Below, piece after piece: positions 1,511-61,955 of a DNA stretch of 64,000 nt; positions within the stretch are counted from its first letter, which is position 1; each line of letters opens with the position of its first letter. The notes beneath the pieces were generated by a model. It had not been told where the DNA came from. It worked only from the letters and a program-made list of their open reading frames with translations, and did no database searches. Position numbers and translations under genes: made by a program. This DNA comes from Raja brachyura (lineage: Eukaryota): contig OY740805.1 in assembly GCA_963514005.1 (NCBI GenBank), positions 42,284,001 to 42,348,000 of the forward strand, read 5' to 3'.

Positions 1511-1543
1511 CAAGTTCTACGATGGATTTGCGCCGTTCCAGCT
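1511..1543 (-). CDS. Gene A cytoplasmic heptad mini-exon (ELERRKSIVEL)
   Basis: tttctccttccag|AGCTGGAACGGCGCAAATCCATCGTAGAACTTG|gtaaga; 33 nt, phase 1-1; resembles BTN ELxWRK exons. Confidence 0.8.
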
Positions 1544-4500
1544 CTGGAAGGAGAAACCAGTGTTACATTTGAACAATGAGCATCAGAGACAATGACTATC
1601 AGAGTCAGAGGTCAATCCAAACAAGGCTGGAAATAAGTGCAGACAATGAGAGAAGTTCCGCGCGGGTCAGGCAGCTGCAGAGAGGAACACAATTCCTGGT
1701 TCACGTTGACAGGGTCTCATCAGGCCTGGACAATGTCAGATGGTGACAGGTGTGAGACAAGTGTAGCGGCAAATAAAGGCGGGAAAACAAATGTTGTGTA
1801 ACATGTGAAGGGCAGGAGAGGGGAATGACGAGGAACGGATCAGGTGAATAAATACACTGTGGGTCCGGGGACGTTTCAATGATTCACCCACGACCAACAG
1901 TTGCTGTAGGAAAATGTGAACACGGTGATCATTGTGTGAAACGGTTGAGGACAATGTTGAATCAGGAAGGCTGCGAGATGCCGGATTCAAAGGCGGGCGG
2001 TTCCCCAGCCTCTGCTCAGCCTCATTAGATCAGTGTAGGAGAGGGAGGGAGAGCTCACACTGGGACGGGACACGCAATGAAAGTGACAAGTGAGCGAAAG
2101 CTCAGGTTGACAACGGGGAACTGAACAGAGATGTTCATCCAAGTGATCACCTCATCTGTGACCCGTCTCTCCACAGTGGAGATCACATACAGGGAACAGA
2201 GACAAGTCCAAGTGACTCTGTGTCCGGTTAAATCTCCTCCCACGGCACCGCCTCATGCACACACAGATGTCACATCTGCCCCTTTACCCCATTATCCCCA
2301 CCTCCCGGGACACTGATACTCTGTCCAGGGGCAACAGTTACCGCTGGAAGGTGGAAGCCCCGCGGAGAGTGCTCTGGATTTCCACTGAAGTTACAGTGGG
2401 AATCTGGGAGAATCCCGCCCGGATTTCCTGACCTGCATCTTACGCTGTTCTTTAACTACCTTTAATGCGTCTGTTTAGTTTCACGTTCCAATAAAACACA
2501 GCAACGTGGGCGGCAATGAGAAGACAAATGGTGAGGACCAGCGGCAGGACCCAGTCAGGAACTCCAGCAGGGAAGATATCATCTGCAGAATGAAGATAGT
2601 GAACGGCGAATATAGTAAACTGTCTTTAAAAATCAGAGATCATTTCCCCACAGAAGTGAGATGTGGATAAATCATCAGTGAGAAACATGTGAGCACCTCA
2701 GTGAGCATTCTGGGCAGTCGGGGTTTCAATGCAATGTAAATCACCTTTATACTTCAATGATCAAACAGAAACGTTCACAAACCTGATATTTTGACGGTTG
2801 CCTCACGTTGTATGTTTAACCATCTGTATTCAACAACACACTTGAACTTGTTTGTTGACTGCCTCGTTACTGTCATGTTGCGCTCCACATTTACAAGACC
2901 ATCAGCATCTTCATGGTACATTGTTTCAGCTTGTGGTAAAACCTGTCCATCCCCGCCAAACCACAGCATCTCTGGTCCAGGATACCATCCACCGGACTTG
3001 CACACGAGCTGGATTCCATCTCCCTGGTATCCCTGCAGCCGAATCCGGGGCAAACTCCCCAAAGCTGCATCAGTGACAGATGTAGAAATAACAATAGTCA
3101 GGAAGAATAGCAACTTGGACCAAAAAGTCATTGTGCAGAAATGTCAACTCTGTTTCTCTCTCCCTAGATGCTGCCTGACATGCTGAATGTTTTCAGCATC
3201 TCGGTAATTAAATCCAGGCTGAGAGTGACAGGGTAAATGTCTGGGCCCTGGAGATTGTGGTGGAACGGAGATATCCAGGGGTCCGAGTATATGGCCACTC
3301 GCGGTCAATATTGGGAACATTGTTGTCATCGTCTACAACCAACCAATATTGACATTGAATGCCTATGGGGCAAGGACTTAGATGTGGCAGCATTTGTTCG
3401 AAACATCTAGGAGGGTTTCCTGACACACCAGGCAGTTAATCCATCGCTCGGTGTGATTTTACTTCGGAGTCATGTGAGTGACTACGTGAAGAGCCCGCCA
3501 GTCCGCATGCGCGTCATTATGTCTAACGCATGACGCAGTGACTGGCTGGCAGGCGCGCTGCTCCTCCAGCGGTAAGTTATAAATCCCACAGGTAAATTTT
3601 AAACTTACTTTTCAGGGTGTCCTTTGTTGCAGGAAACTCTTCTGGCAGAGTTTCCTGCGGGCTATTGCATACGGTAACCCGGGCGGACCGCGGGGAAACC
3701 AATTGGACCGCGGGGATGCAGGCTGCGGAGTGCAATAGGAGGGCAACTATGCGGAGTCAGAGAGTCCTGGGCTGGACGAGGCCGGCCAGGAGGGTTCCCC
3801 TCCGTCATTACGGCACGTTCTCGGACATCCTGCTATGGTCCACGGAGCAGGGCCATATCAGCGCAGGTCGGCGTGCGACTACGGCGGCGCCTGTTTTCAG
3901 GGCTGCTTACTATCTCCCCTCAGTGGAGAGGAGTGCAAGGGGTCAGTGTGTGTCTGCCCCCAACCCCGGAAATAATACACTATCCACGCACCTCCGCACC
4001 CTCCAAATCAAGAACGGGAATGGAACCTACATCAAGGGCCTTTGGGCTTACCTCAAGACCACCGGTATCTACGCAGGTACTTGAGTCTGGGTTTCCGAAA
4101 CATGGGTTGTGTGGTCTAGTTATAGTGTATTATTTCAAAGTATGCCATTTATTTAGTTGCCACTAGATCACGTTGTGCCTATAATAAACAAAAGAGAATT
4201 TTATTTTCACTTGCACCAACATATTGTGCAGTAGAATCGGACATGCCACAGCGGTCTAGATCACTGGCTTGTCGAGCCTTCTTGAGTATATCTTTCAGTC
4301 ACCTGTGCGAGCTATACATGGTGGTAATTCCGCTCATTAAGGAACTGTGGAAGATTCTTTCCCAAAACGCCGACTTATTCATATAAAGTAATCGAATCTC
4401 TGATTTAACTGGGATGGGCTTCTTCATTCATGTAAACGTCTTTGCCCATGACAAATAACAGGCAGGTTTTTGTTCCAGCATTTCTCCCACTATGTCTGAC

Positions 4501-7500: not shown

Positions 7501-10500
7501 ATATTTAGTTATTACTATGTTATAATTTTAGTCAGGGTAGGCAGTGCCTACCTTGCCTACCCTGACGGCACGTGCCTGGTGTTAACATTGTGCTGACGCC
7601 GCATCACCGGTGGGTTCCGGCTACATCCCTGTCCTCGGTCAAACTCACAAGTGGTTATGCTCATGGTACTGGTTTAGTGCAACGGGCCCAGTCATTGCAT
7701 AGCGCGACTGGACAGCATGGTTACATCTGCAGACAAATAACAAGTTATGTTCATGGCTTAGTCAAGCACAGCAGACCAGGGGCATCGGGTCTACTAGAAT
7801 TTGGGCATGGACCTTTGGTTGCCAGACCGGGAGTATTTGCCAACTCTATTTTAAGTTCTGTCTATAGTTTCCTCCCGGATAGGGGTTATTATTGTTATTA
7901 CTTGTTCATAAAAAAAGCATCAGCATGTCTATATCGATGTCATGTCTGAATGCATGATTAATGTTCACTCATCCTTGGTCAATTGATGCTGTGAGTGACG
8001 CATGGACTCGTGTCCACGGTATGAAATCACAGAGCTTTAAATCTTCACGTAGTCACTCGCGTGACTCCGAAGTAAAATAGTAAGACCTTACCAGTTCGAA
8101 GTTTGATCTTTATTTTATTAGGAGTTAGGATGAGGGATTACGTGCCCGCCGCTCCCAACCCTCTCTCATAAGATCAGCTGGTAGTTCTAGTTTCTCGAAT
8201 CTTACTATATTCAGTTCATCAACTGTTATCTGTGATTTCACACCACTGCTTTGAAGAATGTCGTGCATGCGTGCTGGCGGGGTCTTCACGTAACCCTTCA
8301 TCGTAACTCCTCATAAAATAAAGATCAAACTTCAAACTGGCACGTTCTGGTTTAATCTTACTATTATACTTGACCTTGATTTGGGAAATGAGCGCAACGA
8401 GGTGGAGTTTCAAAGGGAGAGTATAAAAATATATCTGTACATATATGCTGTATATGGCAAGTACATTTTTCCTTCAGTAAGGAGACAAAGACTGTGCACA
8501 TTGCCCCAGGTGAGGTCTCGCCAACATACTGTACAACTGTGATGAGGCTTCCCAAAATCTATTCTCCATTCCCCTCAATTAAAATCACTGGGACAGATGT
8601 GATGGAACTCCAGTTAAACACATTCCCATGGCTGCCCTTAATTTACTCAAAGGTAGACAAAAATGCTGGAGAAACACAGCGGGTGAGGCAGCATCTATCG
8701 AGCGAAGGAAACAGGCAACGTTTCTGGCCGAAACCCTTTCTCCATTTACTCAAGTTACTTTTCAATATAAACATTGCAACAGCACATTCTTAATTATGTA
8801 ATTATACATCAACATTGTTGATCGAACGCCCTTTACCATTTGTTCTTTTCACATTTATCGTCAACAATCGGTGTTTTACTTACTCACCACCAACTCGCAG
8901 TTGAGCTACAGATGCTTCATACTCGGCTCCCTCTGTAACTGAACATGTATATTTCCCTTCATCAAACCTTCTTACGTTCTTTATTCTGAGGGAAATGTTC
9001 CCTTTGGCCACTTCATCTTCAAACAGTTCGGCCCTTGCTCTGTAATCCTGGTGTTGAGCGAGGGTGTCATTTTGTCCATGTGTGTACACGAGGACTGGCG
9101 AGATGAGACCTGACTTCCTCCACTGCACGACCATGTTGCTGCTCAATATATCTGGGTCAAGCTGACATTCCAACACCACATCTCCACCTACAGTGGTTAC
9201 AAAACCATCGCCCGGTACAATAACGAGAAATCCACCTGCGGGTAAATTCAAATAATTGAAAAAATATTTATGTATGGAATCAATAAGGATGATCCCTTAT
9301 TGAAAGTCAAGTCGCAGGTAGATGAGGTGGTCAAAAAGGCCTTTGGCTCTTTAGCCTTCACCTGTCAGAGTATTGAGTACAGAACTTGGGAGGTCACGTT
9401 GCAGTTGTATCAGGTTGGTGAGAACGCATTTAGAATATTGTGTTCACTTCTGGGCACCATGTTGTAGGAAAGATATTGTCCAGCTTGAGAATGTTCAGAA
9501 AAGATTTACGAGGATGTTGCCAGGACTAGAGGGTGTGAGCTATAGGGAGAGGTTGAGTAGGCTGGGTCTCTATCCCTTCGAGCCCAGAAGGATGAGGGGC
9601 GATTTTATAGAGGTGTACAAAATCATGGGAGGAATAGATCGGGTAGATGCACAGAGTCGTTTGCCCAGAGTAGGGGAATCAAGGACCAGAGGACATAGGT
9701 TCAAGGTGAAGGGGAAAAGATTTAATAGGAATCCGAGGGATGACATTTTCTCATAAATGGTGGTGGGTGTATGGAACAAGCTGCAAGATGAGGCAGTTGA
9801 GGCTGGGACTATCACATCGGTAAGAAACAGTTAGACAAATACATGGAGAAGACAGGTTTGGAGGGAAATGGACCAAGCGCAGGCAAGGGGACCAACGTAG
9901 CCCGGACATTGTTGGCCGGTGTGGGCGAATGGGGCCGAAGGGCCTGTTTGCACACTGCATCACTCAACGATTATATTACTCTAATGGGGTTAGGGAGGGA
10001 GGGATAGATCAGCCATGATTGTATGGCGGAGTAGACTTGATAGGCGGAATGACCTGAATCTTCTTATTACCTTGTGATCTTATAATCCAGGGATGAAGCC
10101 AGGATATGAACATTTTCATTGGTTGTTCACGATTTATTTTTTATATAATGTTGGGGTCTCAACACCGATTCCCGTGGAACACCACTGTTTATACCTTGCC
10201 ACCCATTGAGAAAAACATTTGGCACCCACTCTCTGCTTCCGACTATCCTGATTATCCACGAATATGAAGTTACCTCCTACTCTTGCAGTCCCCATCATCG
10301 CCCACAGGGGGAGGAAGAACCTCCTACCTGATCGTATCAAGTGATGTGGACAACTGCATTAAAATGAGCGATTTTAAAATATGAATCTTCTGACACCATG
10401 AAGCCCCCTCCATGAGATAAATAAATAGACATCAGACCAGATGTTGTGGTCATTACCGTGGACTGAGCTGAGGATCCCGTGCAGTAACAACACAGCGCAG

Positions 10501-10514
10501 TGAACCACTCCCAT
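1511..10514 (-). CDS. BTN: Butyrophilin-like gene A (partial; 3' exons, probably including B30.2, lie beyond the window start). Exons 10514-10457, 9235-8888, 3064-2783, 2582-2460, 1543-1511
   Basis: All exons have AG/GT boundaries and phase-1 junctions, giving one open frame: signal MGVVHCAVLLLHGILSSVHG, IgV (348 nt), IgC (282 nt), TM, heptad ELERRKSIVEL. Symbol is family-level only. Confidence 0.9.
2460..2582 (-). CDS. Gene A transmembrane exon (DDIFPAGVPDWVLPLVLTICLLIAAHVAVFYWNVKLNRRIK)
   Basis: cattctgcag|ATGAT...ATTAAAG|gtagtt; 123 nt; hydrophobic helix followed by basic residues. Confidence 0.88.
2783..3064 (-). CDS. Gene A IgC exon
   Basis: ALGSLPRIRLQGYQGDGIQLVCKSGGWYPGPEMLW...FKCVV; B7/BTN C-domain motif CxSxGWYPxP; 282 nt, AG/GT. 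Confidence 0.93.
3456..8366 (+). mobile_element. Degenerate DIRS1-like tyrosine-recombinase retrotransposon in the IgV-IgC intron of gene A
   Basis: 3456-3492 is the reverse complement of ~8042-8078, and ~8090-8145 is complementary to ~8286-8340 (ITR/ICR architecture). Coding remnants: QTDAS (~5574), ASRLNHQ (~5950), PRY..TW (~6405). Absent from paralog D. Confidence 0.75.
6439..7578. mobile_element. Non-autonomous hAT-type DNA transposon nested in the DIRS element
   Basis: TIRs caggcacgtgccgt...acggcacgtgcctg with an 8-bp TSD gtgttaac (6431-6438, 7579-7586). Confidence 0.88.
8888..9235 (-). CDS. Gene A IgV exon
   Basis: FLVIVPGDGFVTTVGGDVVLECQL...VQWRK...YRARAELFEDEVAKGNISLRIKNVRRFDEGKYTCSV; 348 nt, cag|...|gtgagt. 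Confidence 0.95.
9290..9960 (+). mobile_element. CR1 LINE 3' fragment
   Basis: ORF 9373-9756: LVRTHLEYCVHFWAP...LENVQKRFTRMLPG. Confidence 0.85.
10457..10514 (-). CDS. Gene A signal-peptide exon (coding part; acceptor at 10534)
   Basis: MGVVHCAVLLLHGILSSVH-G|gtaatg; phase 1 joins IgV in frame; nearly identical to 54633-54690. Confidence 0.85.
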
Positions 10515-10954
10515 CCCAGTGGAGGGGTCAGTGCCTGTGGGAGAGAGAGAGAAGTGTTAGTCCTGTGATGGGCGGGAAGCTGTGATCCCCCCCCTCCGTC
10601 CCCGCTGTCGGTGTCCACCACTCTCAATCACTGTTGACCAGGGGGTGAAAGGTCACACCTTGTGCGAGGTGGCCAAAGGACTCCAGGCTCCGCACCGGGA
10701 CCCCGGCTCCCTTTACAATCTGTTCCTTGAGACCTGTCACCGGGGTCGGGTCCGGGACGAATCTTCTCCCGGGAATTTCTTCAGTCACCCTTCATCAAAC
10801 CTGTCAAAGGACAGAAAATGATTCTGAAGTCAAAAGATGTGGGAACAATGAAAAATAATCAGGGGGTGAGGTTATATTGTCCAGTGGAATAAAAGTGAAC
10901 GATGCATCCTAGACCTCTGTTCTCTCATTTGTTCTTGTTTCTCTCGTGATGACC

Positions 10955-12270: not shown

Positions 12271-12924
12271 TTCTCCTTTTTTGGTGATTCTTTACCGACA
12301 CACCACGAGACAGTTTATCCCCCAAATGGCGTTAATACAGAGTTGCGCACAACTTCATATTGTTCTAATGTTCCCATTGGTCAGTTACGTTGCAGTCTGG
12401 CCACAGTTATAGGAAACAAGTTAAAAGTGTCAGGAATATCCCTACCTTATTCTTAACTTTGGTTGTTCGTCGTCTCAATGCCTCCCTCACAGTCCTTCGA
12501 TTGTTAATGTGCAGTAAAAGCCCTTTGGACTACCTTTTATCTCGATCAGACCTTTGGATTCCTTTATGATTTTAGCCTGAATCTTTATCAGTTCTCTTTA
12601 GTAAAAGGAGCAAGCCAGACTTTGGACCATCACTGCCCAGAAAAGGCGCGGCGTGTTGTGTTTGCTGCTGAGAGGTTGAATATTTGCGAAGAGTATTAGT
12701 GTGGAGCATTTGTCCGGTTTCAAGCTCAAAGGAAGGCGTTTGTCCTGGGAGCAGATGTCAGGTTATAGCAGTCAGAGAAAGGAGTCATGTAAATCATCAC
12801 ATTGATCAGAAACACCTGAGGGGGGTGAACCAGTGGCCCAGCGGTTCTGAAATAGCAATCCATCCGGTACCAAACCCACAAACCTTTTCTGTAACGGGTG
12901 AATCGGTTTTTCTGTAACAGGTGA

Positions 12925-14815
12925 AACGGGCCGAAAAGATGAAGTACGAAGAGAAGCTTCCCAGGAATATAAAGAAGGATAGTAAAAGCTTCTTTAGATA
13001 TGTTAAGGGAAAAAGAGTAGCAATGTTAAATGTGGGCCCCTTGAAGGCAGACACGGGTGAAATAATTATGGGCAACAAGGAAATGGCAGAAGAGTTGAAC
13101 AGGTACTTCGGATCTGTCTTCACTAAGGAAGACACAAACAATCTCCCAGATGTACTGGAGGACAGAGGATCAACGGAGGTAGAGGAATGTTGATTAGGCG
13201 AGAAATAGTATTGGGTGGGCTAATGGGACTGAAGGATGATAAATCCCTTGGGCCTGATGGTCTGCATGCCAGGGTCCACAGGGAGGTGGCTCTAGAAATA
13301 GTGGACGCATTGGTGACCATTTTCCAATGTTCAATAGATTCTGGATCAGTTCCTGTGGATTGGAGGATTGCTAATGTTATCCCACTTTTCAAGAAAGGAG
13401 CGAGGGAGAAATCGGGCTATTACAGACAAGTTAGTCTGACTTCGGTGGTGGGAAAGATGCTAGAGTCAATTATTAAAGAGGTAATAATGGGGCACTTGGA
13501 TAGCAGTAAAATGATTAGTGTAGCTCAACATGGATTTATGAAAGGGAAATCATGCTTGACTAATCTTCTGGAATTTTTTGAGGATGTGATAAGTAAAATG
13601 CACGAAGGGGTGCCAGTGGATGTAGTGTATCTAGACTTTCAGAAAGCTTTTGATAAGGTCCCGCACGTGGGACTGGTGACTAAAACCAGAGCACATGTTA
13701 TTGGGGGTAGGGTGTTAACATGGATAGAAAATTGATTGGCAGACAGAAAGCAAAGAACAGGAGTGAACGGGTCCTTTTCAGAATGGCAGGCAGTGGCGAG
13801 TGGAGTGCCGCAAGGCTCGGTGTTGGAGCCGCAACAGTTTACCATCTATATTAATGATTTGGAAGAGGGTATTAGAAGCAGCACTAGCAAGTTTGCGGAT
13901 GACACAAAGCTGTGTGGCAGTGTGAACTGTGAAGAGGATGTTAGGAGGTTACAGGGTGACCTGGACAGGTTGAGTGAGTGGGAAGATGGGTGGCAGATGC
14001 TGTATAATATAGATAAATGTGAGGTTATCCATTTTGGCGGCAGAAACAAGGGGGCAGATCATTATCTCAATGGAGTTAGATTAGGTAAGGGGGAGGTGCA
14101 GCGAGACCTGTGCGTCCTTGTACATCGGTCACTGAAAGTTGGCGTACTGATGCAGCAGGCAGTGAACAAATCTAATGGAATGTTGGCCTTCATAACAAGA
14201 GGATTTCAGTATAGGAGTAAAGAGGTCCTTCTGCAGTTGTATAGGGCTCTGGTGAGACCACATCTGTACAGTTTTGGTCTCCGAATTTGAGGAATGATAT
14301 CCTTGTGATTGAGGCAGTGCAGCGTAGGTTCACGAGATTGATCCCGGCATGGCGGGACTGTCATATGAGGGAAGATTGAAAAGACTAGGCTTGTATTCAC
14401 TGGAGTTTAGAAGGATGAAGGGGATCTTATAGAAACATATCAAATTATAAAAGAACTGGACAAGCTAGATGCAGGAAAAATGTTCCCAATTTTGGGCGAG
14501 TCCAGAACCAGGGGCCACAGTCTTAGAATAAAGGGGAGGTCATTTAAGACTGAGCTGAGAAACACTTTTTCAGCAAGAGAGTTGTGAATTTGTGGAATTC
14601 CCTGCCACAGAGGGCAGTGGAGGCCAAGTCACTGGATGCGTTTAAGAGAGAGTTAGATAGACCTCTTGGGGCTAGTGGAATCAAGGGATATGGGAGAAGG
14701 CAGGCACGGGTTATTGATTGGGGACGATCATCCATGACACAATGAATGGAGGTGCTGGCTCGAAGGGTCGAATGGCCTCTTCCTGCACCTATTCTCTATG
14801 TTTATATGTTTCTAT
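12925..14815 (+). mobile_element. 5'-truncated CR1 LINE (ORF2 RT, disrupted)
   Basis: ORFs 12921-14290 contain [36 protein letters not shown] and FADD; ends in a ctatgttt-type tail. Confidence 0.93.
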
Positions 14816-16164
14816 GACATCTTTGTTGTGAGAAATCTTAACAATGTTGTTTTGTTTTGCTGTTTCTTGTGAAGGACAATAATTAATTCCGTATATTCCG
14901 GTTAGCGGGGTGCATCTTGCTCCACGGTCTGGGATAGTCTCGGGTGCTTTATATCATGTCCCTCTGTGCATGGACGCTGTATATTGACTTCTCATTGTTG
15001 CATTGTAAAGTGCAATGCTTATCTCCTTGCTTTGACCACAGCAATCGTCCTGCCTCTCTCATCGTCTCCGTTTCTCTGCAGCTAGGCTCAATGCACAATA
15101 GAACATAGAACACAGAACAACACGGGAACATGACCCTCGGCCCACAATGACCGTGCCGAACACGATGCGGAGACCAATGCCTAACTGCTGTCACACAATC
15201 CACCTCCCTCCACTCCCTGCATTAACGTTGTGTAATGTTCTGAATTTTCTGAAACTGAAGAGCAGTTTGCAAACTGCATTAGCGTTTAATGATAGTATTT
15301 TGCAAACACAAAGATAAAACACTCAGGGGCAAACTCTAGTAAAAACGACCAGCCTTGAACTTATGCATATTGTTGGACTCACGCCTTCTGTATTTGTCTG
15401 AAGTTATACCCTGTGGCGTTTTGCCAATAATTTATTTTATATTACCTGTTAAAATAGATTTCGTAAAATTAGTTAATTGTCTTAATTTAATAGCGATAGT
15501 GCTTTCCCTTTAAACACTGCCTCGATGTTCTATTTCCAGGTGAAACCAAGGAAGGAATTATTTCCACGATGAAGGGAGTAGGCTGCATATTTGAGCTGTT
15601 GCTTGTTCATGTGGTGACCAAGGTAATGGGACTATCGACGCGACTGGCACACACACCTTGCCGTGAATATTGGGCTACTTCACTTGTGCCTCAGCCGATC
15701 TATGGGATGTTCCGACTCACTCAGAGACTCTGTTAACAAAGTCCTGAGTCAGATGGTCGTGGGATCAAACCCCAATTTGGAGCATTCGAGCGACAGAGAT
15801 GTGTCGTTATTCTAATATGATTTTTGGAAGAATTATGAACCCTAAAATGGAAATGTTCCTGCTTTTGCTTAACTGCCACCCTACTCCCGAAAAAATGTAC
15901 GCAACTCGCCAATGTAAAAAGCTGAAATTTAAATATTTTATTTTTCCGGAGGAGATCTGTGTGATTTTGCCAGACTATCCGTTGGTGGCCATGGTGGGTG
16001 AAGATGCCCTATTGGACGGTCAGAAGGTAGCGGATACATCACTGGACGCTCTGGAGATCCGATGGTTTACAACGAGTCCGATGGTTTACATCGAGCAGCA
16101 TGTGAGGCTGGGAAAAAAAACCCTCGGACCCACAAACCCTCAGCATAGGAGCACCGCAAGGCTG

Positions 16165-17108: not shown

Positions 17109-17112
17109 GCAG

Positions 17113-17397
17113 GATTTGGCCTCCGGCCCTGGATCCGCTTGGAGGAAAGCACCACGCAAGGAGTGCGTGTGGTGTGTATGTCGGATGGATGGTTTCCAAA
17201 GCCGGAGATACGGTGGCTGGATGGGAGTGGACAGGATGTAACAGCGCGGTCTGACACACTGTTCACTGAGGACTCCAGCGGTCTGATCACTGTCCACAGT
17301 CACATCGATGTCACAAGTGAATCTGTGAACAGGTATTCCTGTTTCATACGAAGTAGGTCAACGGGGAAAACACGAGAGACACATCTCCGGATATCAG
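17113..17397 (+). pseudogene. Gene B IgC exon (open frame, dead donor)
   Basis: [35 protein letters not shown]...RYSCF, followed by gaacgt instead of gtatgt. Confidence 0.88.
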
Positions 17398-24822: not shown

Positions 24823-24824
24823 CT

Positions 24825-45620: not shown

Positions 45621-45961
45621 GTAATGTAGGATGGTAAATCAATCTTTTGGTATTCTGGCCTTTATACATCAGAGCATTAAGTATAGAAGTTGGGATGTAA
45701 TGTTAAAATTGTACAAGGCATTGGTGAGGCCAATTCTGGAGTATGGTGTACAAATTTGGTCACCAAATTATAGGAAAGATGTCAACAAAATAGAGATAGT
45801 ACAGAGGAGATTCACTAGAATGTTGACTGGGTTTCAGCACCTAAGTTAGAGATAACGGTTGAACAAGTTAGGTCTTTATTCTTTGGAGCGCAGAAGGTTA
45901 AGGGGGCACTTGATAGAGGTCTTTAAAAATATGAGAGGGATAGACAGATTTTACATTTGAC

Positions 45962-47068: not shown

Positions 47069-47261
47069 TGAGCTTTTTCCATTGAGCGTCGGGAAGATTC
47101 AAACAAGAGGACATGATTTGAGAATTAAAGGAAAATATGTTTAGGGGTAACGTGAGGGTAACTTCTTTACTCAGAGAGTGGTAGCTGTGTGTAATGAATT
47201 TCTAGTGGAAGTGATAGAGGCAGATTCGATTTTATCATTTAAAAATGAATTGGACATGGAT

Positions 47262-50200: not shown

Positions 50201-51252
50201 TGCAAGGTGACTTGGATAGGTTGGGTGAGTGGGCAAATTTATGGCAGATGCAGTATAATGTGGATAAATGTGCGGTTATCCACTTTGGTGGCAAAAACAG
50301 GAAAGAAGACTATTATCTGAATGGTGGCCGATTAGGAAAAGGGGAGATGCTACGAGACCTGGGTGTCATGGTACACCAGTCACTGAAATTAGGCATGCAG
50401 GTGCAGCAGGCAGTGAAGAAAGCGAATGGTACGTTAGCATTCATAGCAAAATGATTTGAGTATAGGAGGAAGAAGGTTCTACTGCAGGTTACACAAAAAG
50501 CTGGAGAAACTCAGCGGGTGCAGCAGCATCTAAGGAACTTTTGTGTCCTTCGCTCCTTAGATGCTGCTGCACCCGCTGAGTTTCTACAGCTTTTTGTGTA
50601 ACCTTCGATTCTCCAGCATCTGCAGTTCCTTCTTTAACACAAGGTTCTACTGCAGTTGTACAGGGTCTTGGTGAGACCACACCTGGAGTTTTGAGTACAG
50701 TTTTGGTCTCCTAATCTGAAGAAAGACATTCTTGCCATAGAGGCGGTACAGAGAAGGTCCACCAGACTAATTCCTGGGATGTCAGGACTTTCATATGAAG
50801 AAAGACGGAATAGACTCGGCTTGTACTCGTTAGAATTTAGAAGATTGAGGGGGGATCTTAGAGAAACTTATAACATTCTTAAGGGGTTTGACAGGCTAGA
50901 TGCAGGAAGATAGTTCCCGATGTTGGAGAAGTCCAGAACAAGGGGTCACAGTTTAAGGATAAGGGGGAAGTCTTTTAGGACCGAGATGATCAAAACATTA
51001 TTTCAGAGAGTGGTGAATCTGTGGAATTCTCTGCCACAGAAGGTAGTTGAGGCCAGTTCATTGGCTATATTTAAGAGGGAGTTGGATGTGGCGCTCGTGG
51101 CTAATGGGATCAGGAGGCATGGAGAGAAGGCAGGTACAGGATACTGAGTTGGATGTTCAGCTATGATCATATTGAATGGCAGTGCAGGCTCGAAGGGCCG
51201 AATGGCCTACTCCTGCACCTATTTTGTATGTTTCTATATGTCTATGTTTCTA
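47262..51252 (+). mobile_element. Long degenerate CR1 (ORF2 start LCLNARSIRNK) with a nested CR1 (~47962-48580) and a Penelope-type hairpin (50488-50640)
   Basis: Endonuclease and RT motifs across ORFs 47431-51147; the endonuclease VII..FN motif is split by the inner CR1. Confidence 0.9.
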
Positions 51253-54200
51253 TATAGACGGGAAAGGAATGGAGGGTGATGGGCTGAGTACAGGTAGATG
51301 AGACTAGGTGAGAGTACGTGTTCGACATGGACTAGAAGGGCCGAGGTGGCCTGTTTCCGGGCTGTAATTGTTATATGGTTATATGGTTATCAGACAAATC
51401 TTATTTTTTTCCAAATGCAATGTCTCAGTCTATAAATTCTATTTGAACAGGTAATATAAAATAAATTATTGGCAAAACGGCACAGGGTATAACTTCAGAC
51501 AAATACAGAAGGCGTGTATGCAATAATATGCATTTTCAAGGCTGGTCGTTTTTACTTGAGTTTGCCCCTGAGTGTTTTATGTTTGTGTTTGCAAAATACT
51601 ATCATTGAACGCTGATGCAGTTTGCAAACTGCTCTTCCGTTTCAGAAAATTCAGAATATTACACAACTTTAATGCAGGGAGTGGAGGGAGGTGGATTGTG
51701 TGACCGCAGTTAAGCATTGGTCACTGGGTCGTGTTCGGCACAGACATTGTGGGCCGAGGGTCATGTTCCTGTGTTGTTCTGTGTTCTATGTTCCATTGTG
51801 CACTGAGCTTAGCTGCAGAGAAACGGAGACGATGAGAGAGGCAGGGAGATCCCTGTGGTCAACGCCACGAGCTGGGCTACAGTATGAAGTCAAGATACGG
51901 CGTCCATTCACACGGGGACATGATATGAACCACGCGAGACTATCCCAGACCGTGGAGCAAGATGAACCCCGCTAACCGGAACATACGGAATAAATTAGTG
52001 TCCTTTAGAAGAAACAGAAAAACAAAACAACATTCTTGAGATTTCTCACCGCAAAGATGTCCAAGTTGCTTGTCTTTGAAAATGGCGGCGTTGATTCAAT
52101 TTAACATTCCAAGATTAGGAAGGAAAATTATTTGAAAAATAACATGCAGACAATTTGGTCACTGTTGGTAAAAGTTGGGATATTGAAACGCACAGAATAA
52201 ACGGCTGATGAAAAAGACGATTCACCTGTTACAGAAAAGGTTTGTGGGTGTGGTACCGGATGGATTGCTGTTTGTGACAGCCAGCGCTGGGCTACTGGTT
52301 CAGTCCCCTACTGAGATTCTGGTCAATGTGATGATTTATATCAGTCCTTTCTCTGGCTGCTATAACCTGACATCTGCACCCAGGACAAACGCCTTCCTTT
52401 GACCTTGAATCCGGACAAATGCTCCACACTAATACTCTTCGCAAATATTCAACCTCTCAACAGCAAAAACACGACGCCGCGCCTTTTCTGGGCAGTGATG
52501 GTCCAAAGTCTGGCTTGTTCCTTTTATTAAAGAGAACTGATAAAGATTCAGGCTAAAATCATAAATGAATCCAAAGGTCTGATCGAGATAAAAGGGAGTC
52601 CAAAGGGCTTTTACTGCACATTAGCAATCGAAGGACTGTGTGGAGGCAGTGAGACGACGAACAACCAAAGTTGGGAATAAGGTAGGGATATTTCTGACAC
52701 TTTTAACTTGTTTCCTATAACTGTGGCCAGACTGCAACGTAACTGACCAATGGGAACATTAGAACAATATGAAGTTGTGTGCAACTCTGTATTAATGCCA
52801 TTTGGGTGATAAACTGTCTCGTGGTGTGTCGGTAAAGAATCACCAAAAAAGGAGAAACGACAAAGCAGTCAGTGGATGTTGTTTACTTGGATTATCAGAA
52901 GGATTTTGATAAGATGCCACACGCGATGCTGCTAAACAGGATTGGAGCTCCTGGTATTTGAAGCAAGGTTCCAGCGTGGATAGTAGATTGGTTGACGGGC
53001 AGAAGCAACGAGTGAGAATAAAAGAGGGCATTTCTGGTTGGCTGCCGGTGACTAGTGGTGTTCCACGGGGGTCGGTGTAGGGGCCACTACATTGCACCTC
53101 ATGTGTTAATGGGATGGATGGGAGAATTAGTGGCTTTGTGGACAAATTTGCAGACGATATGAAAATAGGTGGAGGGGCCAATTGTGTAGAGGAAGCATGG
53201 AGGCTGTAGAATGGCGTGGACAGGTTGGGAGAGTGGGCAAAGAAGTGGAAATGGAATACAGCGAGTTGCTGTGTTTGACTCTGAGAGTTCACAGTCTAAA
53301 ATATCCGTTCCCCGCCACTCCCTGGCACTGATGAGGACAAGCGCAGTGAACTGCTCAGAGACATTTTCTGAAACGCCCAATCTCTCAGGACCGATCTCTC
53401 CAGTCGCTCACCTTTCCCCAGCAACCGATCTCCGCTGAGAGTCCAACCATCCCCAAAGTAGATAATGTCTGGGACTCACGTCACACTGAGAATCTGACCG
53501 CTGATCTCCCACCTTCTCCCCATAAAACGTGAGCACGTCCACGTCGGCTGTTGAAAAACGTTCACTGTTTCAGGAATGACAGGTCGTGTCAAGGTGAGCT
53601 GCTCCAGATCGGTGGCGCTTTGCTGGTCCGTTACTAAACCCTCTACCAGTGGTAGAACAAGGGCAACAAATGTCCTTCTGTTTAATCAGGGCTCAACTAC
53701 TCAAACCTGGAACGTACAATGGAACAGGGGAGGCGACCACCTGGACCAGGGGTTATTCCGTATTGACTCCACACTGCTCTGTGCGGCCAGGTGTGTGTTG
53801 GGATGGTCAGCCCTGGAGATGTAACTCCGCTCGTTCCCTCCGCTTCTTTCACCAATGACCTCAGGGCGACTCCTCCGCTCACGGCCCTCCGGCCACAGGG
53901 CCCACTTCCCCATCCTTTACCGGGCCGACCCGTCCCCATTCCGAGCCCCTCCATTCAAATCCTGGTCATCGTGAGAGAAACAAGAACAATTGAGAGAACA
54001 GAGACCTGGGAGGCATCGTTCACTCTTTATTCCACTGGAAAATATAACCTCACCCCCTGATTATTTGTATTTCTCCCACAACTTTCGACTTCAGAATCAT
54101 TTTCTGTTCTTTGACAGGTTTGACGATGGGTGACTGAAGAAATTCCCGGGAGAAGATTCGTCCCGGACCCGACCCCCGTGACAGGAGACTCAATGAGCAG

Positions 54201-54265
54201 ATTGGAAAGGGAGCCGGGGTCTCGGTGCGGAGCCTGGAGTCCTTTGGTCACTGGTTACCCTTGGT

Positions 54266-54481
54266 CACCCCGCACAAGGTGTGACCTTTCACCCCGCACG
54301 AGGTGTGACCTTTCACCCCGCACAAGGTGAGACCTTTCACCCCGCACAAGGTGTGACCTTTCACCCCGCACAAGGTGAGACCTTTCACCCCGCACAAGGT
54401 GTGACTTTTCACCCCGCACAAGGTGTGACTTTTCACCCAGCACAGGGTGTGACCTTTCACCCCGCACAAGGTGTGACCTTT
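54266..54481. repeat. 24-bp minisatellite, 9 copies (caccccgcacaaggtgtgaccttt), upstream of the gene D signal exon
   Basis: Directly visible; a single unit at the paralogous site (~10644-10670). Confidence 0.95.
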
Positions 54482-54632
54482 CACCCCTGGTCAACAGTGA
54501 GTTGGGGGAGGTGGACACCGGCAGCGGGTACCGTGCGGGGGGGGGGGGGGGTCACAGCTTCCCACCCATCACGGGTCTAACACTTCTCTCTTTCTCTCTC
54601 TCTCTCCCTCAGGCACTGACCCCTCCACTGGG

Positions 54633-57600
54633 ATGGGAGTGGTTCACTGCGCTGTGGTGTTACTGCACGGGATCCTCAGCTCAGTCCACGGTAATGACCA
54701 CAACATCTGGTCTGATTTATATATATTTATCTCATGGAGGGGGCTTCATGGAGTCAGATGATTCATATTTTAAAATCGCTCATTTTAATGCAGTTGTCCA
54801 CTTAATACGATCAGGTAGGGGGTTCTTCCTCCCTCTGTGGGCGATGATGGGGACTGCAGGAGTAGGAGGCAACTTCATATTCGTGGATAATCAGGATAGC
54901 AGGAAGCAGAGAGTGGTTGCCGATCGTTTTTCTCTGTGGGTGGCAAGATGTAATGAGTGGTGTCCCACGGGGATTGGTATTGTGACCCCAATGTTATATA
55001 AACATATAATCGTGAACTACCTGTGAACATTTTCATATCCTGTTTTCATCCCTGGATTATAACGTCATAAGTGATAGGAGCAGATGAATGTCATTCCGCC
55101 CATCAATTCTACTCCGCCATTCAATCATGGCTGATCTATCTCTCCCTCCCTAACCCCATTAGAGTCATAGAGTGATACAGTGTGGAAACAGACCCTTCGG
55201 CCCAAGTAACCCACACCGGCCAACAATTTCCCCTCGGCGCTAGTCCCACCTGCCTGCGCTTGGTCCATATCCCTCTAAACCTGTCCTATCCATGTACTTG
55301 TTAAACGATGGGATAGTCCCAGCCTCAACAATCTCCTCTGGCAGCTTGTTCCATACACCCAGCACCGTTTGTGTGGAAACGTTGCCTCTCGGATTCCTAT
55401 TCAATCTTTTCAATTAATTAAATCTATTAAATTTGCTATCTATTCGGCTCTCTCTCCTTGGATCCCATGCGATCTAACCTTCCAAAGCAGCCTACCTTGC
55501 GGAACCTTCTCGAACGCCTTATTGAAGTCCATGTACACAACATCTAGAGTTCTGCCTTCATCAATCTGTCTGGTCACGTCTTCAAAAAAATCAACCAGAT
55601 TTGTGAGACGTGCTCTCGTGTACAGAACCATGCTAATAATCCCCACTCAGCCCTGGCCCATCCAGATGCTTGTATATCACATCCCTCTACAGATGTTATG
55701 CTCACCGGTCTATAGTTCCCAGCATTGTTTCTGCAGCACTTCTTGAAAAGATTGCAACGTTTGCCATCCTCCGGTCTTCCAGCACCTCTCCTGTTTTGAA
55801 GGACGACTCGTAAATTACATCCGGGGCTCCCGTAATTTCCTCTCGAGTTTCCCACAATATCCTCAGATATATCAGATCATTCTCCTGCCTTCTTCTCATT
55901 ACCCCTGACACCCGTACTAATCAAGAATCACTGTCTGAAAAATATCTATTGACTTGACCTCCAGAGCCTTCTGTGGCAATGAATTCCACACATTCACCAC
56001 CCTCCGCTTAAGAAATCCATCCTCAACCCCCTCCTAAATAAATGTCCTTTAGTTCTGAATATACGACCTAGAGTCGTATCCTCTCCCACGAGTGGAAAGA
56101 TCACAATACTCCAAATACGGCCAGACCTGCGCCTTATAGAGCCTCAGCATTACATCCCTGTTTTTGTATTCTAGCCCTCATGAAACAAATGAAATTGGGC
56201 TTTGTGCGTGCAGAACGATGCAAACTTTACTAACATTCATTTTGTTTTCTATTTTTCCGTATTGATTCCTTAAATAATCATGTTTTCACTTATTTAAATT
56301 GACCCGCAGGCGAATTTCTCGTTATTGTATCGGACGATGGTTTTGTAGCCACTGTAGGTGGAGATGTGGTGTTGGAATGTCAGCTTGTCCCAGATATATT
56401 GACCAGCAACATGGTCGTGCAGTGGAGGAAGTCAGGTCTCATCTCGCCAGTCCTCGTGTACAGACATGGACACAATGACGCCCTCGCTCAACACCAGGAT
56501 TACAGAGCAAGAGCCGAACTGTTTAAAGATGAAGTGGCCAAAGGGGACATTTCCCTCAGAATAAAGAACGTAAGAAGGTTTGATGAAGGGAAATATACAT
56601 GTTCAGTTACAGAGGGAACTGAGTATGAAGCATCTGTAGCTCAACTGCGAGTTCGAGGTGAGTAAGTAAATACATGGATATTATGAACGTTAAATGAATG
56701 TGATTGTCTTTATAAATCGTTTATCTTGGTGTAAAGATAGAATTGCTGTTCAATTAATACAATATTCACAATATTTCAAGCGTCTTACACTTTCGCTGCT
56801 CCCAAGGTTGAGCCAGTGAATTCCTCAGGATCTGCATATTGTATCCAGTGATACAGTTGAACAGAGGGATCTGGGAATAAGCGTGCATAATGCCTTGAAG
56901 GTGGAATCTCATATAGATAGGGTGGTAAAGAAAGCTTTTGTTATGCTAACCTTTATAAATCAGAGCATTGAGTATAGAAGCTGGGATGTAATGTTAAAAT
57001 TGTACAAGGCATTGGTGAGACCAAATCTGGAGTATGGTGTACAATTTTGGTCGCCCAATTATAGGAAGGATGTCAACAAAATAGAGAGGGTACAGAGGAG
57101 ATTTACTAGAATGTTGCCTGGGTTTCAACAGCTAAGTTACAGAGATAGGTTGAATAAGTTAGGTCTTTATTCTCTGGAGCGCAGAAGGATAAGGGGGGAC
57201 TTGATAGAGGTATTTAAAATGATGAGAGGGATAGACAGAGTTGATGTGGACAAGCTTTTCTCTTTGAGAATAGGGAAGATTCAAACAAGAGGACATGACT
57301 TTAGAATTAAGGGACAGAAGTTTAGGGGTAACATGAGGGGGAACTTCTTTACTCAGAGAGTGGTAGCGGTGTGGAATGAGCTTCCATTGGAAGTGGTGGC
57401 GGCAGGTTCGTTGGTATCATTTAAAAATAAATTGGATAGGCATATGGATGAGAAGGGTATGGAGGGTTATGGTATGAGTGCAGGCAGGTGGGACTAAGGG
57501 AAAAAAGTTGTTCGGCACGGACTTGAAGGGCCGAGATGGCCTGTTTCCGTGCTGTAATTGTTATATGGTTTACATGGTTACATAGTTATAGGAGCTGGTT

Positions 57601-60600: not shown

Positions 60601-61955
60601 TACAGGACATTGATTTGGAAAATGAGCGCAGCCAGTTGGAGATTCAAAGGGAGAGTATTTTGAGAACAGTGATCATAATTCAATAAATGTTCAGCTAGTT
60701 GTGGAAGTGATAAGTGGACCTCGATAAAGCTTAATTAGGGAAAGACTATTTTCAACAGTATCAGGCTGGAAACAAAATGCTGGAGAAACTCAGCGGGTCA
60801 GGCAGCATCTCTGGAGAGAAGGAATGGGTGACGTTTCACAGAATGCTGGAGTAACTCAGCGGGACAGGCAACACCTCTGCAGAGAAGGAACGGGTGACGT
60901 TTCGGGTCGAGACCCTTCTTCAGTATCAGGCTGGAGTTGGGGAGAGTAGATTTGTAGAAGTCAATATCAGACGAGTGAGGTTTGTTAAAGGCCAGTGATC
61001 AGAATGCAGGAACAACATGTCATTGTGAGGAAGAAAGCCAAGGATAGATACATCTGAGCACTTGGATGACAAGACATGTTGCAAATTTGGTCAAAAGTGA
61101 AATAAAGGAAGCATATGAAATATTCAGGTCATCCCAAAGCTTCATAGGCTCCCTGTGAATCTTTCCTGAACCCCTTTCAGCTTGAGGGCAGTCTCCCACT
61201 GGTCAGGTGAGCAGAACTATGGACAGTTTTCCATGTGTGGTCTCAGCGATGCCTTGTACAGTTGTAGCACAACATCCCGACTCTTGTCCTCAATGTCCTG
61301 ACCGATGGAGACAAGCATGACAAACACCTTTTTCACACTTTGTAATTAGTGTTGCTACTTCCAGGTGGCCATATACTCGGACCCCGAGATATCTCCGTTC
61401 CACCACACTCTCCAGGGCCCAGCCTTTTACCATGTAACCCCCACCCTGGCTTAATTTACCGGGATGCTGAAAACATTCAGCAGGTCAGGCAGCGTCTGGG
61501 GAGCGAGAAGCAGAGTTGACATTTCTGCTCAATGACTTTCCATGGGAACTAAAAATAATTAGAAATTGTATAGGAATTGTTGCAAGAGGATTGAGTACTT
61601 GAACAAAATGCTGTTTGGTCCAAGTTGCTATTCTTCCTGGCTATTGTTATTTCTACATCTGTCCCTGATGCAGCTTTGGGGAGTTTGCCCCGGATTCGGT
61701 TGCAGGGATACCAGGGAGATGGAATCCAGCTCGTGTGTAAGTCCGGTGGATGGTATCCTGGACCAGAGATGCTGTGGATCGGCGGGGATGGACAGGTTTT
61801 ACCACAAGCTGAAACAATGCACCATGAAGATACGGAAGGTCTTGTAAATGTGGAGAGCAACGTGACAGTAACGAGGCAATCAACAAACAAGATCAAGTGT
61901 GTTGTCCGGAGCAGACGATTGAACGTAAGACATGAGGCAATTGTTAAAATATCAG
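54633..61955 (+). CDS. BTN: Butyrophilin-like gene D (paralog of A; partial): exons 54633-54690, 56310-56657, 61674-61955
   Basis: Signal MGVVHCAVVLLHGILSSVHG, IgV 348 nt and IgC 282 nt, all open with canonical phase-1 splice sites; TM exon not seen in the window. Confidence 0.88.
55400..55870 (-). mobile_element. Degenerate CR1 fragment
   Basis: LTNLVDFFEDVTRQIDEGRTLDVVYMDFNKAFEKVP. Confidence 0.8.
56310..56657 (+). CDS. Gene D IgV exon
   Basis: cccgcag|GCGAATTT...GTTCGAG|gtgagt; near-identical to the gene A IgV. Confidence 0.94.
56851..57590 (+). mobile_element. Young CR1 3' fragment (tatggtta-tail family)
   Basis: ORF 56883-57497 is nearly identical to the C-terminal part of 44798-45535. 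Confidence 0.92.
57662..58684. mobile_element. AT-rich non-autonomous DNA transposon with TAG...CTA termini (hAT-like)
   Basis: Imperfect TIRs tagcaatgttacaaattt / aaagttgcaacataccta; flanking duplication aacaatg; empty site at ~8805-8822 in the left arm. Confidence 0.65.
58725..59892 (+). mobile_element. Degenerate CR1 LINE
   Basis: ORFs 58779-59288 and 59188-59751. Confidence 0.9.
60771..60920 (-). repeat. Tandem Penelope-type repeat with hammerhead-like core (60896-60923) and 15-bp TSD
   Basis: cagtatcaggctgga at 60756-60770 and 60921-60935; minus strand ctgaagaagggtctcgacccgaaacgtc. Confidence 0.72.
61674..61955 (+). CDS. Gene D IgC exon
   Basis: gatgcag|CTTTGGG...ATATCAG|gtttgt; 282 nt. 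Confidence 0.93.

What the first reader, a model, noticed from the sequence alone, without database searches (positions are those of the whole stretch)
1511..61955. Head-to-head pair of two divergent butyrophilin types, duplicated as a unit: candidate BTN heteromer system in a cartilaginous fish
Seen: two clearly different BTN types (A/D and B/C differ in leader, IgV, IgC and TM) sit 5'-to-5' in both copies (A<- ->B; C<- ->D). Removing the 13.2-kb insertion leaves the C and D start codons ~3.3 kb apart. Established: mammalian BTNs act as partner pairs (BTNL3/BTNL8, Btnl1/Btnl6, BTN2A1/BTN3A1) that engage gamma-delta TCRs, and cartilaginous fish have gamma-delta T cells. Inference: this is a co-regulated two-gene module, possibly on a bidirectional promoter, encoding a heteromer. 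That would be an ancient or convergent counterpart of BTN-gamma-delta regulation.
Basis: partly seen in the sequence, partly recalled or inferred. Interest (0 to 1): 0.8.

Follow-up and report, generated by a model that had tools for sequence, protein, structure and literature searches.

The report
Mirrored pair of skate butyrophilin genes
Two ancient kinds of butyrophilin (B7-like immune surface) genes lie head to head in a skate genome and the pair was copied once in mirror image, but one copy is dead and nothing here shows that the two proteins act as partners.

Summary
The window carries four butyrophilin (BTN) genes, A<- ->B and C<- ->D. A and D are one type and B and C another, and the two units are mirror images with arms 75-96% identical.

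- B is a pseudogene.
- Only C is complete.
- A runs off the window.
- D loses its match with A 22 bases before the membrane-anchor (TM) exon's acceptor.
- The 13.2-kb LINE nest lies inside C's first intron, not between the genes. The first exons of each pair are at most about 1.7-2 kb apart.
- The N gap sits between the 3' ends of B and C and touches no exon. Only the mirror placement of the two units depends on it.

New here:
- Both types are old lineages found in sharks and in rays (IgV and IgC trees, support 96-99).
- Their juxtamembrane segments carry opposite charge: type 1 basic with an EWK motif, type 2 acidic.

The heteromer and gamma-delta T cell reading stays untested. There are no usable RNA data. 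The spread of the two types across species is uneven.

This scan had already noted decayed BTN clusters elsewhere in this genome, and BTNs are already published for cartilaginous fish. This is an ordinary gene-cluster segment that yields one testable idea.

The parts
1511..1543 (-). Gene A (type 1) juxtamembrane micro-exon, 33 nt, encoding ELERRKSIVEL. The rest of A, including B30.2, lies off the window to the left.
   Evidence: Regex and translation with cag|...|gtaaga splice sites. It matches the Rhinoraja type 1 proteins.
2460..2582 (-). Gene A membrane-anchor (TM) exon
   Evidence: tblastn gives 86-90% identity to skate type 1 proteins. Splice sites are canonical.
2783..3064 (-). Gene A IgC exon
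   Evidence: Pfam PF22705, E 1.4e-22. Splice sites read.
8888..9235 (-). Gene A IgV exon
   Evidence: Pfam V-set. PDB hits to CD276, MOG and BTN2A1. Splice sites read.
10457..10534 (-). Gene A leader exon (ATG at 10514, MGVVHCAVLLLHGILSSVHG, donor gtaatg)
10659..10802 (-). Probable 5'UTR exon of gene A. Its 3' end is at 10659. Its 5' end is not mapped, and about 10740-10800 is only a lower bound.
   Evidence: One contig of run X1 (depth 691) skips 10534-10657. The skipped ends read GT..AG on the minus strand, and the acceptor lies 20 nt before the ATG.
12755..12897 (+). Gene B (type 2 pseudogene) non-coding exon 1
   Evidence: tblastn of residues 1-52 of the Leucoraja model P0132. Donor read.
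12912..14815 (+). LINE fragment found only in the left arm, inside B's intron 1
   Evidence: Self-BLAST. RVT_1 ORFs. Very high repeat depth.
15540..15622 (+). Gene B leader exon (ATG at 15569)
15949..16085 (+). Gene B IgV fragment. The acceptor is CAG->CGG, the canonical Cys is replaced by Gly, and the 3' half is replaced by a retroelement.
   Evidence: No Pfam hit. Sequence read. tblastn covers only residues 19-62.
17113..17397 (+). Gene B IgC exon. The reading frame is open but the splice donor is GT->GA.
22332..22387 (+). Gene B relic of the ELQLF..EG micro-exon
   Evidence: blastn gives 86% identity to C's micro-exon.
24413..24827 (+). Gene B B30.2 relic, frameshifted and cut off by a repeat
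   Evidence: Two tblastn pieces in different frames. Partial PRY/SPRY.
27438..27696 (.). Assembly gap between the 3' ends of B and C. It touches no exon.
   Evidence: N run located. Exon map. The gap was not filled or looked up.
29098..29633 (-). Gene C (type 2) B30.2 exon, including the stop codon
   Evidence: PRY and SPRY domains. Best PDB matches are the BTN2A2 and BTN3A1/3A3 B30.2 domains, E about 1e-38.
30607..30633 (-). Gene C 27-nt micro-exon (GYDDMDIEY)
   Evidence: tblastn to P0132 and canonical splice sites.
31449..31475 (-). Gene C 27-nt micro-exon (ELQLFCTLE). This exon is skipped in the Leucoraja model P0132 (labelled isoform X2), which runs from the TM exon straight to GYDDTDIEY.
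31981..32109 (-). Gene C TM exon
34813..35097 (-). Gene C IgC exon
   Evidence: Pfam PF22705. Splice sites read.
37540..37887 (-). Gene C IgV exon
   Evidence: Pfam V-set. PDB hits to CD276, BTNL8, MOG and BTNL3. Sequence read.
38079..38162 (-). Gene C exon 2, carrying the leader (ATG at 38133, [19 protein letters not shown])
38250..51434 (+). 13.2-kb nest of non-LTR retrotransposons, inside C's intron 1
   Evidence: Present only in the right arm. Endonuclease and RVT_1 ORFs. C's exon 1 maps beyond it.
52226..52373 (-). Gene C non-coding exon 1. Its 5' end is not mapped.
   Evidence: 81% match to residues 1-52 of the Leucoraja model P0132, E 4e-24. In-frame stops show it is untranslated here. 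The donor is CAG|GTGAAT.
54117..54298 (+). Probable 5'UTR exon of gene D, placed by homology with A's. It is followed by a 24-nt minisatellite that repeats the donor motif.
   Evidence: A/D alignment. There is no direct RNA evidence for D.
54613..54690 (+). Gene D (type 1) leader exon (ATG at 54633)
56310..56657 (+). Gene D IgV exon
61674..61955 (+). Gene D IgC exon
   Evidence: Pfam PF22705, E 4.9e-24. Sequence read.
62134..62135 (+). Point where D stops matching A, 22 nt before where the TM exon's acceptor lies in A. No TM exon is found in 62135-64000, which includes a second gap at 63203-63414.

Best explanation
This is a segment of a large, partly decayed butyrophilin gene cluster in a skate. 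It contains two mirror-image copies of an inherited two-gene unit.

Each unit holds one type 1 gene and one type 2 gene. They are transcribed away from each other, from first exons at most about 1.7-2 kb apart. Both types are old elasmobranch lineages.

Each type encodes a B7-like type I membrane protein with these parts:
- an IgV domain and a BTN-type IgC domain outside the cell
- one membrane helix
- short 27-33-nt juxtamembrane exons
- a cytosolic B30.2 domain

After the duplication the copies decayed independently:
- B became a pseudogene.
- LINEs swelled C's first intron by 13 kb.
- D lost its match with A just before its TM exon.

Most likely the two lineages do different, non-redundant jobs as immune cell-surface ligands or sensors. 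Their closeness then reflects duplication history, perhaps with a shared control region, rather than an obligate heteromer.

Shown here: the exons, their state, the duplication and the two lineages. Inferred: the function and any co-regulation.
For: - Domains.
- Exon maps and splice sites.
- B's lesions (lost acceptor, Cys->Gly, retroelement in IgV, lost IgC donor, no TM exon, frameshifted B30.2).
- Mirror duplication with arm-specific LINEs.
- Type 2 exon 1 lies beyond the LINE nest.
- Type 1 5'UTR intron.
- Two clades, each holding sharks and batoids, in the IgV tree (support 96 and 97) and the IgC tree (99 and 99).
- Type 2 is 65-73% identical between sharks and rays and has few copies. Type 1 is 50-60% identical and multi-copy.
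- Uneven spread of the two types across species.
- Other notes of this scan describe decayed BTN copies nearby in the same genome.
Against: Several features fit a functional pairing better than mere neighbourhood:
- Both lineages have been kept since before the shark-ray split.
- RefSeq accession numbers for a type 2 and a type 1 protein are consecutive in Leucoraja (same 104-kb scaffold), Cetorhinus and Mustelus.
- The unit was duplicated whole.
- The juxtamembrane segments carry opposite charge.

Function was not tested at all.
Confidence: 0.55

Rival explanations
1. Type 1 and type 2 are a co-regulated partner pair. They assemble into a heteromer at the cell surface, like BTNL3/BTNL8, Btnl1/Btnl6 or BTN3A/BTN2A1, and regulate gamma-delta or other T cells. 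Because elasmobranch BTNs form their own clade, this would be an independent origin of BTN heteromery.
For: - Two old lineages are retained in sharks and in rays.
- The first exons diverge and lie at most about 2 kb apart in both arms.
- The unit was copied whole.
- Accession numbers are consecutive in three species and close in two more.
- The juxtamembrane segment is basic in type 1 (median net +3; EW[KR] in 20 of 29 proteins). It is acidic in type 2 (median -3; EW[KR] in 0 of 18).
- An EWK motif near the B30.2 domain is functionally indispensable in BTN3A1, and the related DWR is conserved in BTNL3/8 and Btnl1/6 (PMC5798315).
- Run X1 holds a spliced type 1 5' end and also type 2 IgV-like contigs.
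Against: - There is no expression, interaction or receptor evidence.
- B is dead, so unit A-B has lost its partner gene.
- Copy numbers do not match. Five Rhinoraja type 1 proteins were found, against one type 2-like protein.
- No canonical type 2 was found in Hemitrygon, Hypanus or Mobula birostris, and no type 1 in Narcine. The search is limited, so this is weak.
- Accession numbers are far apart in Pristis, Stegostoma, Heterodontus, Carcharodon and Amblyraja.
- The Hemiscyllium model P0123 implies a same-strand arrangement.
- BTNs persist in squamates, which lack gamma-delta T cells (PMC12841164).
- There is no CpG island between the genes.
Confidence: 0.2
2. The mirror duplication is an assembly artefact. 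The two contigs on either side of the gap would then be two haplotypes of one locus, scaffolded next to each other in opposite orientation, and only one head-to-head pair would exist.
For: - The two units meet at a scaffold gap (27438-27696), and they are fully collinear in mirror image.
- Immune gene clusters are prone to haplotype duplication in assemblies. This point rests on general knowledge.
Against: - The arms differ by 4-25% (non-coding K is 0.07-0.21). They also differ by a 13.2-kb LINE nest and a 1.9-kb LINE, and one type 2 copy is a pseudogene while the other is intact. That is far beyond ordinary allelic difference.
- In the IgC tree, A and D each sit next to different Amblyraja proteins, as paralogues would.
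Confidence: 0.05

Closest known systems
Mammalian BTN/BTNL partner pairs (BTNL3/BTNL8, Btnl1/Btnl6, BTN3A1 with BTN3A2 or BTN2A1)
   Same: - The same domain plan: IgV, BTN-type IgC, TM, short juxtamembrane exons and B30.2.
- Two distinct paralogues are encoded side by side in one cluster.
- Type 1 carries an EWK motif just before the B30.2 domain, as BTN3A1 does (PMC5798315).
   Different: - No orthology. PDB matches are spread evenly over CD276, MOG, BTNL and BTN1/2/3, and a published phylogeny finds BTNs to be class-specific (PMC12841164).
- Nothing is shown here for pairing, ER retention, surface co-dependence or TCR binding.
- From my own knowledge, not checked here: the human pairs lie in tandem on one strand, not head to head.
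Human extended-MHC BTN2A/BTN3A cluster
   Same: - From my own knowledge (Rhodes et al. 2001, cited in PMC6790196), not checked in the text: a unit of two different BTN subfamilies was duplicated as a block, leaving a pseudogene (BTN2A3P).
- IgV exons were homogenised between the BTN3A copies (PMC6790196). Here the A/D IgV dS of 0.039 against an IgC dS of 0.214 looks similar.
   Different: - The duplication here is inverted and the genes are divergent.
- The lineage split is elasmobranch-wide rather than within mammals or primates.
Annotated elasmobranch BTN genes (RefSeq 'butyrophilin subfamily 1/3 member A1-like'; PMC12841164)
   Same: C is 79-93% identical, exon by exon, to Leucoraja XP model P0132. 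A and D are 74-87% identical to skate type 1 models. So these are members of gene lineages that are already annotated.
   Different: In the library searched, I found no paper that separates the two lineages, or describes their divergent pairing or the opposite juxtamembrane charge.

Membership tests
Butyrophilin (BTN/BTNL) family | N-terminal B7-like IgV (V-set) domain | tested here: met
   V-set is found in A, C and D. Best PDB matches are CD276, MOG, BTNL8/3 and BTN1/2/3. B's IgV is broken and gives no hit.
Butyrophilin (BTN/BTNL) family | Membrane-proximal IgC domain of the BTN type | tested here: met
   PF22705 (C2-set_3, BTN3A2-like Ig-C) is found in A, B, C and D, with E from 2e-17 to 5e-24.
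Butyrophilin (BTN/BTNL) family | Single TM exon followed by short in-phase juxtamembrane exons | tested here: met
   C has a TM exon plus two 27-nt exons. A has a TM exon plus one 33-nt exon. All have canonical splice sites and keep phase 1. D's TM exon is not in the window.
Butyrophilin (BTN/BTNL) family | Cytosolic B30.2 (PRY/SPRY) domain | tested here: met
   C has PRY (E 1.9e-14) and SPRY (E 3.7e-19). Its best PDB matches are the BTN2A2 and BTN3A B30.2 domains. For A and D this exon lies outside the window, but their closest relatives have it.
Butyrophilin (BTN/BTNL) family | One-to-one orthology with a named mammalian BTN or BTNL gene | tested here: inconclusive
   No mammalian subfamily stands out in the PDB searches. 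I built no tree with tetrapod sequences. PMC12841164 reports class-specific clades.
BTN heteromer partner system | Two distinct paralogues encoded in one cluster | tested here: met
   The types are about 35-42% identical to each other, form separate clades, and are adjacent in the window.
BTN heteromer partner system | Co-expression in the same cells | tested here: inconclusive
   No run is on record as RNA. The contigs laid are dominated by repeats. One spliced type 1 5' end and type 2 IgV-like contigs occur in run X1, whose tissue is unknown.
BTN heteromer partner system | Physical association, and mutual dependence for leaving the ER and reaching the surface | not testable with these tools
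   This needs co-transfection or multimer modelling.
BTN heteromer partner system | Engagement of a gamma-delta TCR | not testable with these tools
   No receptor data.
BTN heteromer partner system | EWK/DWR-type motif between the TM and B30.2 domains (PMC5798315) | tested here: inconclusive
   EW[KR] is present in 20 of 29 type 1 proteins and in 0 of 18 type 2 proteins. A's own copy of that exon lies off the window.
Bidirectional-promoter gene pair | Divergent orientation | tested here: met
   A(-)/B(+) and C(-)/D(+).
Bidirectional-promoter gene pair | Transcription starts less than about 1 kb apart (the usual definition, from my own knowledge) | tested here: inconclusive
   The known first exons are at most about 1.75 kb apart for C-D and at most about 2.0 kb apart for A-B, which includes a 530-bp repeat. 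The true starts are not mapped.
Bidirectional-promoter gene pair | CpG island between the genes (common but not obligatory) | tested here: not met
   CpG observed/expected is 0.4-0.7 in the unique parts of the interval, at GC 0.46-0.56.

The most novel reading that the evidence does not exclude
Type 1 and type 2 are an obligate heteromeric butyrophilin pair. They have been kept side by side since before sharks and rays split. They are driven from one short divergent control region. Oppositely charged juxtamembrane segments help hold them together: basic with EWK in type 1, acidic in type 2. This would be an independent invention of BTN heteromery outside mammals, and a handle on how cartilaginous fish select or regulate innate-like T cells.
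Probability: 0.15. Interest if true: 0.8.

Novelty: new member of a known kind. Interest (0 to 1): 0.4.

Why it matters
In mammals, butyrophilins shape gamma-delta T cell compartments as pairs of partner proteins. How old that principle is remains open.

This locus gives a concrete, cheap test outside bony vertebrates. It offers two named lineages, exon maps, a short divergent control region, and a charge-complementarity prediction that charge-swap mutants can test.

As it stands, it is an accurate annotation of an ordinary, partly decayed immune gene cluster. It corrects the picture of the 13-kb insertion, which is intronic and does not separate the two genes' 5' ends.

Tried and rejected
- **Synteny in other species.** I used RefSeq accession order as a weak stand-in. 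The result was mixed: consecutive in 3 species, near in 2, far in 5.
- **Expression.** The look-up of sequencing runs returned no run on record as RNA. It was swamped by LINE and repeat contigs. It yielded only one spliced type 1 joint and type 2 IgV-like contigs, with no contig on B's leader.
- **Bidirectional promoter at 3.3 kb.** I first rejected this as too far apart. I revised that once type 2's exon 1 was found.
- **D's TM exon.** I searched 62135-64000 by pattern, tblastn and sensitive blastn and found nothing.
- **dN/dS.** The A/D IgV value of about 1.2 rests on only 15 differences, too few to claim selection.
- **Failed query.** One PDB query was sent in the wrong frame and failed.
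  - The exons were searched and treed one by one.
  - The N gaps were not filled or looked up.
  - The large representative-protein search was not used, because the family was not in doubt.


Full report
**What is there**

ORF listing and Pfam show B7/butyrophilin-type exons on both strands:
- V-set IgV domains.
- The BTN-specific Ig-C domain PF22705.
- PRY/SPRY.

The IgV exons match CD276, MOG, BTNL8/3 and BTN1/2/3 in the PDB, with no favourite. C's B30.2 matches the BTN2A2 and BTN3A B30.2 domains best, at E about 1e-38.

A word search with C's B30.2 found only elasmobranch proteins among its best 120 hits. Most of these were skate proteins, and none was identical. So the window is from a skate whose copy of these genes is not in the protein collection.

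**Exon maps**

I used tblastn with full-length elasmobranch BTNs and read the splice sites directly.

| Gene | Strand | Type | Exons seen in the window |
|---|---|---|---|
| A | - | 1 | leader (ATG 10514), IgV, IgC, TM, and a 33-nt micro-exon ending at 1511; then it leaves the window |
| D | + | 1 | leader (ATG 54633), IgV, IgC (ending at 61955) |
| C | - | 2 | leader (ATG 38133), IgV, IgC, TM, two 27-nt micro-exons, B30.2 with its stop codon at 29098-29100 |
| B | + | 2 | leader (ATG 15569) and decayed remains, listed below |

- All of A's visible exons are open, with canonical splice sites.
- D's visible exons are also intact. But D stops matching A at 62134, which is 22 nt before the acceptor of the TM exon in A. 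No TM exon is present in the remaining 1.9 kb.
- C is complete, and every splice site is canonical.
Whether they belong to D is unknown.

B is a pseudogene:
- The IgV acceptor is CAG->CGG.
- The canonical Cys is Gly.
- The 3' half of the IgV exon is replaced by a retroelement.
- The IgC donor is GT->GA.
- No TM exon is found.
- One micro-exon relic remains.
- The B30.2 is frameshifted and truncated.

The exons were searched one by one. I did not build, search or fold a joined coding sequence.

**The gap**

The N run at 27438-27696 lies 2.6 kb beyond B's last relic and 1.4 kb beyond C's stop codon. No exon or reading frame crosses it. Each head-to-head pair lies inside uninterrupted sequence. 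Only the claim that the two units sit tail to tail in mirror image rests on the scaffold join.

**The duplication**

Self-BLAST gives collinear inverted matches between the arms, at 75-96% identity. Non-coding K is 0.07-0.21.

- The right arm alone carries a 13.2-kb nest of non-LTR retrotransposons at 38250-51434, with endonuclease and reverse-transcriptase ORFs.
- The left arm alone carries a 1.9-kb LINE.
The A-B distance is about 3.15 kb after removing its LINE.

The picture still changes. The Leucoraja RefSeq model P0132 begins with 52 residues that match the window at 52373-52218 on the minus strand (81%, E 4e-24) and at 12755-12928 on the plus strand. Both matches end at a good splice donor. 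In the window they contain stop codons. So type 2 genes have a non-coding exon 1, and the LINE nest lies in C's first intron.

For type 1, one contig of run X1 skips 10534-10657. The skipped ends read GT..AG on the minus strand, and the acceptor lies 20 nt before A's ATG. That indicates a 5'UTR exon from 10659 upward.

The known first exons are therefore:
- at most about 1.75 kb apart for C-D;
- at most about 2.0 kb apart for A-B, which includes a 530-bp repeat.

Transcription starts are not mapped, and there is no CpG island.

**Two old lineages**

I ran word searches with the ectodomains of a Pristis type 2 protein and a Rhinoraja type 1 protein. I then built separate trees for the IgV and IgC exons. 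Both trees give two clades with support 96-99, and each clade contains sharks and batoids.

- B and C fall in type 2. A and D fall in type 1.
- Type 2 is well conserved, at 65-73% identity between sharks and rays, and has few copies.
- Type 1 is more diverged, at 50-60%, and is multi-copy in batoids.

The juxtamembrane segments differ consistently:
- Type 1 is basic, with median net charge +3. EW[KR] occurs just before the B30.2 in 20 of 29 proteins.
- Type 2 is acidic, with median net charge -3, and has no such motif in 18 proteins.

An EWK motif at that place is functionally indispensable in BTN3A1 (PMC5798315).

A and D have nearly identical IgV exons (dS 0.039) but more diverged IgC exons (dS 0.214). 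In the IgC tree they also sit next to different Amblyraja proteins. This suggests an older duplication whose IgV exons were later homogenised, as described for hominoid BTN3A genes (PMC6790196).

**Is the pairing conserved elsewhere?**

RefSeq accession order is a weak stand-in:
- Type 2 and type 1 proteins are numbered consecutively in Leucoraja (same 104-kb scaffold), Cetorhinus and Mustelus.
- They are numbered closely in Scyliorhinus torazame and Heptranchias.
- They are far apart in Pristis, Stegostoma, Heterodontus, Carcharodon and Amblyraja.

A Hemiscyllium model splices type 2 exons to a degenerate type 1 IgC exon, so those exons are on the same strand.

The searches also gave an uneven spread across species. 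They found no canonical type 2 in Hemitrygon, Hypanus or Mobula birostris, and no type 1 in Narcine. These absences depend on a length-limited word search, so they are weak.

**Expression**

No public run is on record as RNA for this locus. Apart from the spliced type 1 joint, it showed type 2 IgV-like contigs in the same run and nothing on B's leader. The tissue is unknown.

Two indirect signs suggest that type 2 is transcribed in skates:
- The UTR exon in RefSeq model P0132.
- A 1,013-nt Logan contig encoding 307 residues of a type 2 protein, P0137.

Co-expression is not established.

**Reading**

- An old, divergently transcribed two-gene unit is real.
- A heteromer, or a link to gamma-delta T cells, is untested.
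- BTNs are already reported in cartilaginous fish. They are described as class-specific expansions, and they persist in squamates, which lack gamma-delta T cells (PMC12841164). Any pairing here would therefore be convergent.
- The library searches found no paper on the two lineages or their pairing.
- Other windows of this genome were already noted as decayed BTN clusters, which fits birth-and-death evolution.

I put about 0.55 on an ordinary cluster segment that carries an inherited unit, about 0.2 on a true partner system, and about 0.05 on an assembly artefact.

Noticed in passing
window 52226-52373 (-) and 12755-12897 (+): Type 2 genes have a non-coding first exon. The 13.2-kb LINE nest therefore lies in C's intron 1, which is about 14 kb long, and not between the genes.
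   Followed up: yes
proteins P0068-P0225: The juxtamembrane segment is basic with an EWK motif in type 1 and acidic in type 2. This holds across sharks and rays, so the two could be electrostatically complementary.
   Followed up: partly
window 8888-9235 vs 56310-56657, and 2783-3064 vs 61674-61955: The A/D IgV exons (dS 0.039; 12 of 15 differences change the amino acid) are much more alike than the A/D IgC exons (dS 0.214). This looks like IgV exon homogenisation by gene conversion, perhaps with diversifying change.
   Followed up: partly
window 54255-54520: A 24-nt minisatellite of about 9 copies lies in D's 5'UTR intron. Each copy repeats the splice-donor motif CACAAG|GTGTGA, which occurs once in A.
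   Followed up: partly
window 1-1487: An 86-bp tandem array, with copies about 96-97% identical, lies in A's intron just beyond the 33-nt micro-exon. It produces long spurious ORFs in three frames.
   Followed up: no
window 7051-7580 and 11111-11645: A pair of 530-bp repeats in inverted orientation (92.5% identical, high-copy by read depth) brackets A's 5'UTR, leader and IgV exons. This is a possible substrate for the kind of IgV-exon inversion noted elsewhere in this genome.
   Followed up: no
P0123 (Hemiscyllium ocellatum), P0163 (Rhinoraja longicauda), P0121 (Amblyraja radiata): Three RefSeq models look odd. P0123 has type 2 exons spliced to a type 1 IgC exon. P0163 is a type 1 protein with two B30.2 domains. 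P0121 has three type 2 IgV domains in a row. These are either read-through or merged models, or real multi-domain variants.
   Followed up: partly
window 29098-29633: C's B30.2 domain is 70-77% identical to B30.2 domains of a very large skate TRIM family (A33-like, TRIM39-like; more than 1000 hits). This suggests exchange between BTN and TRIM B30.2 exons, or a recent common expansion.
   Followed up: no
Stingrays and mantas show many type 1 proteins but no canonical type 2. The electric ray Narcine shows three type 2 proteins and no type 1. The search is limited, but this is worth checking in the genomes.
   Followed up: partly
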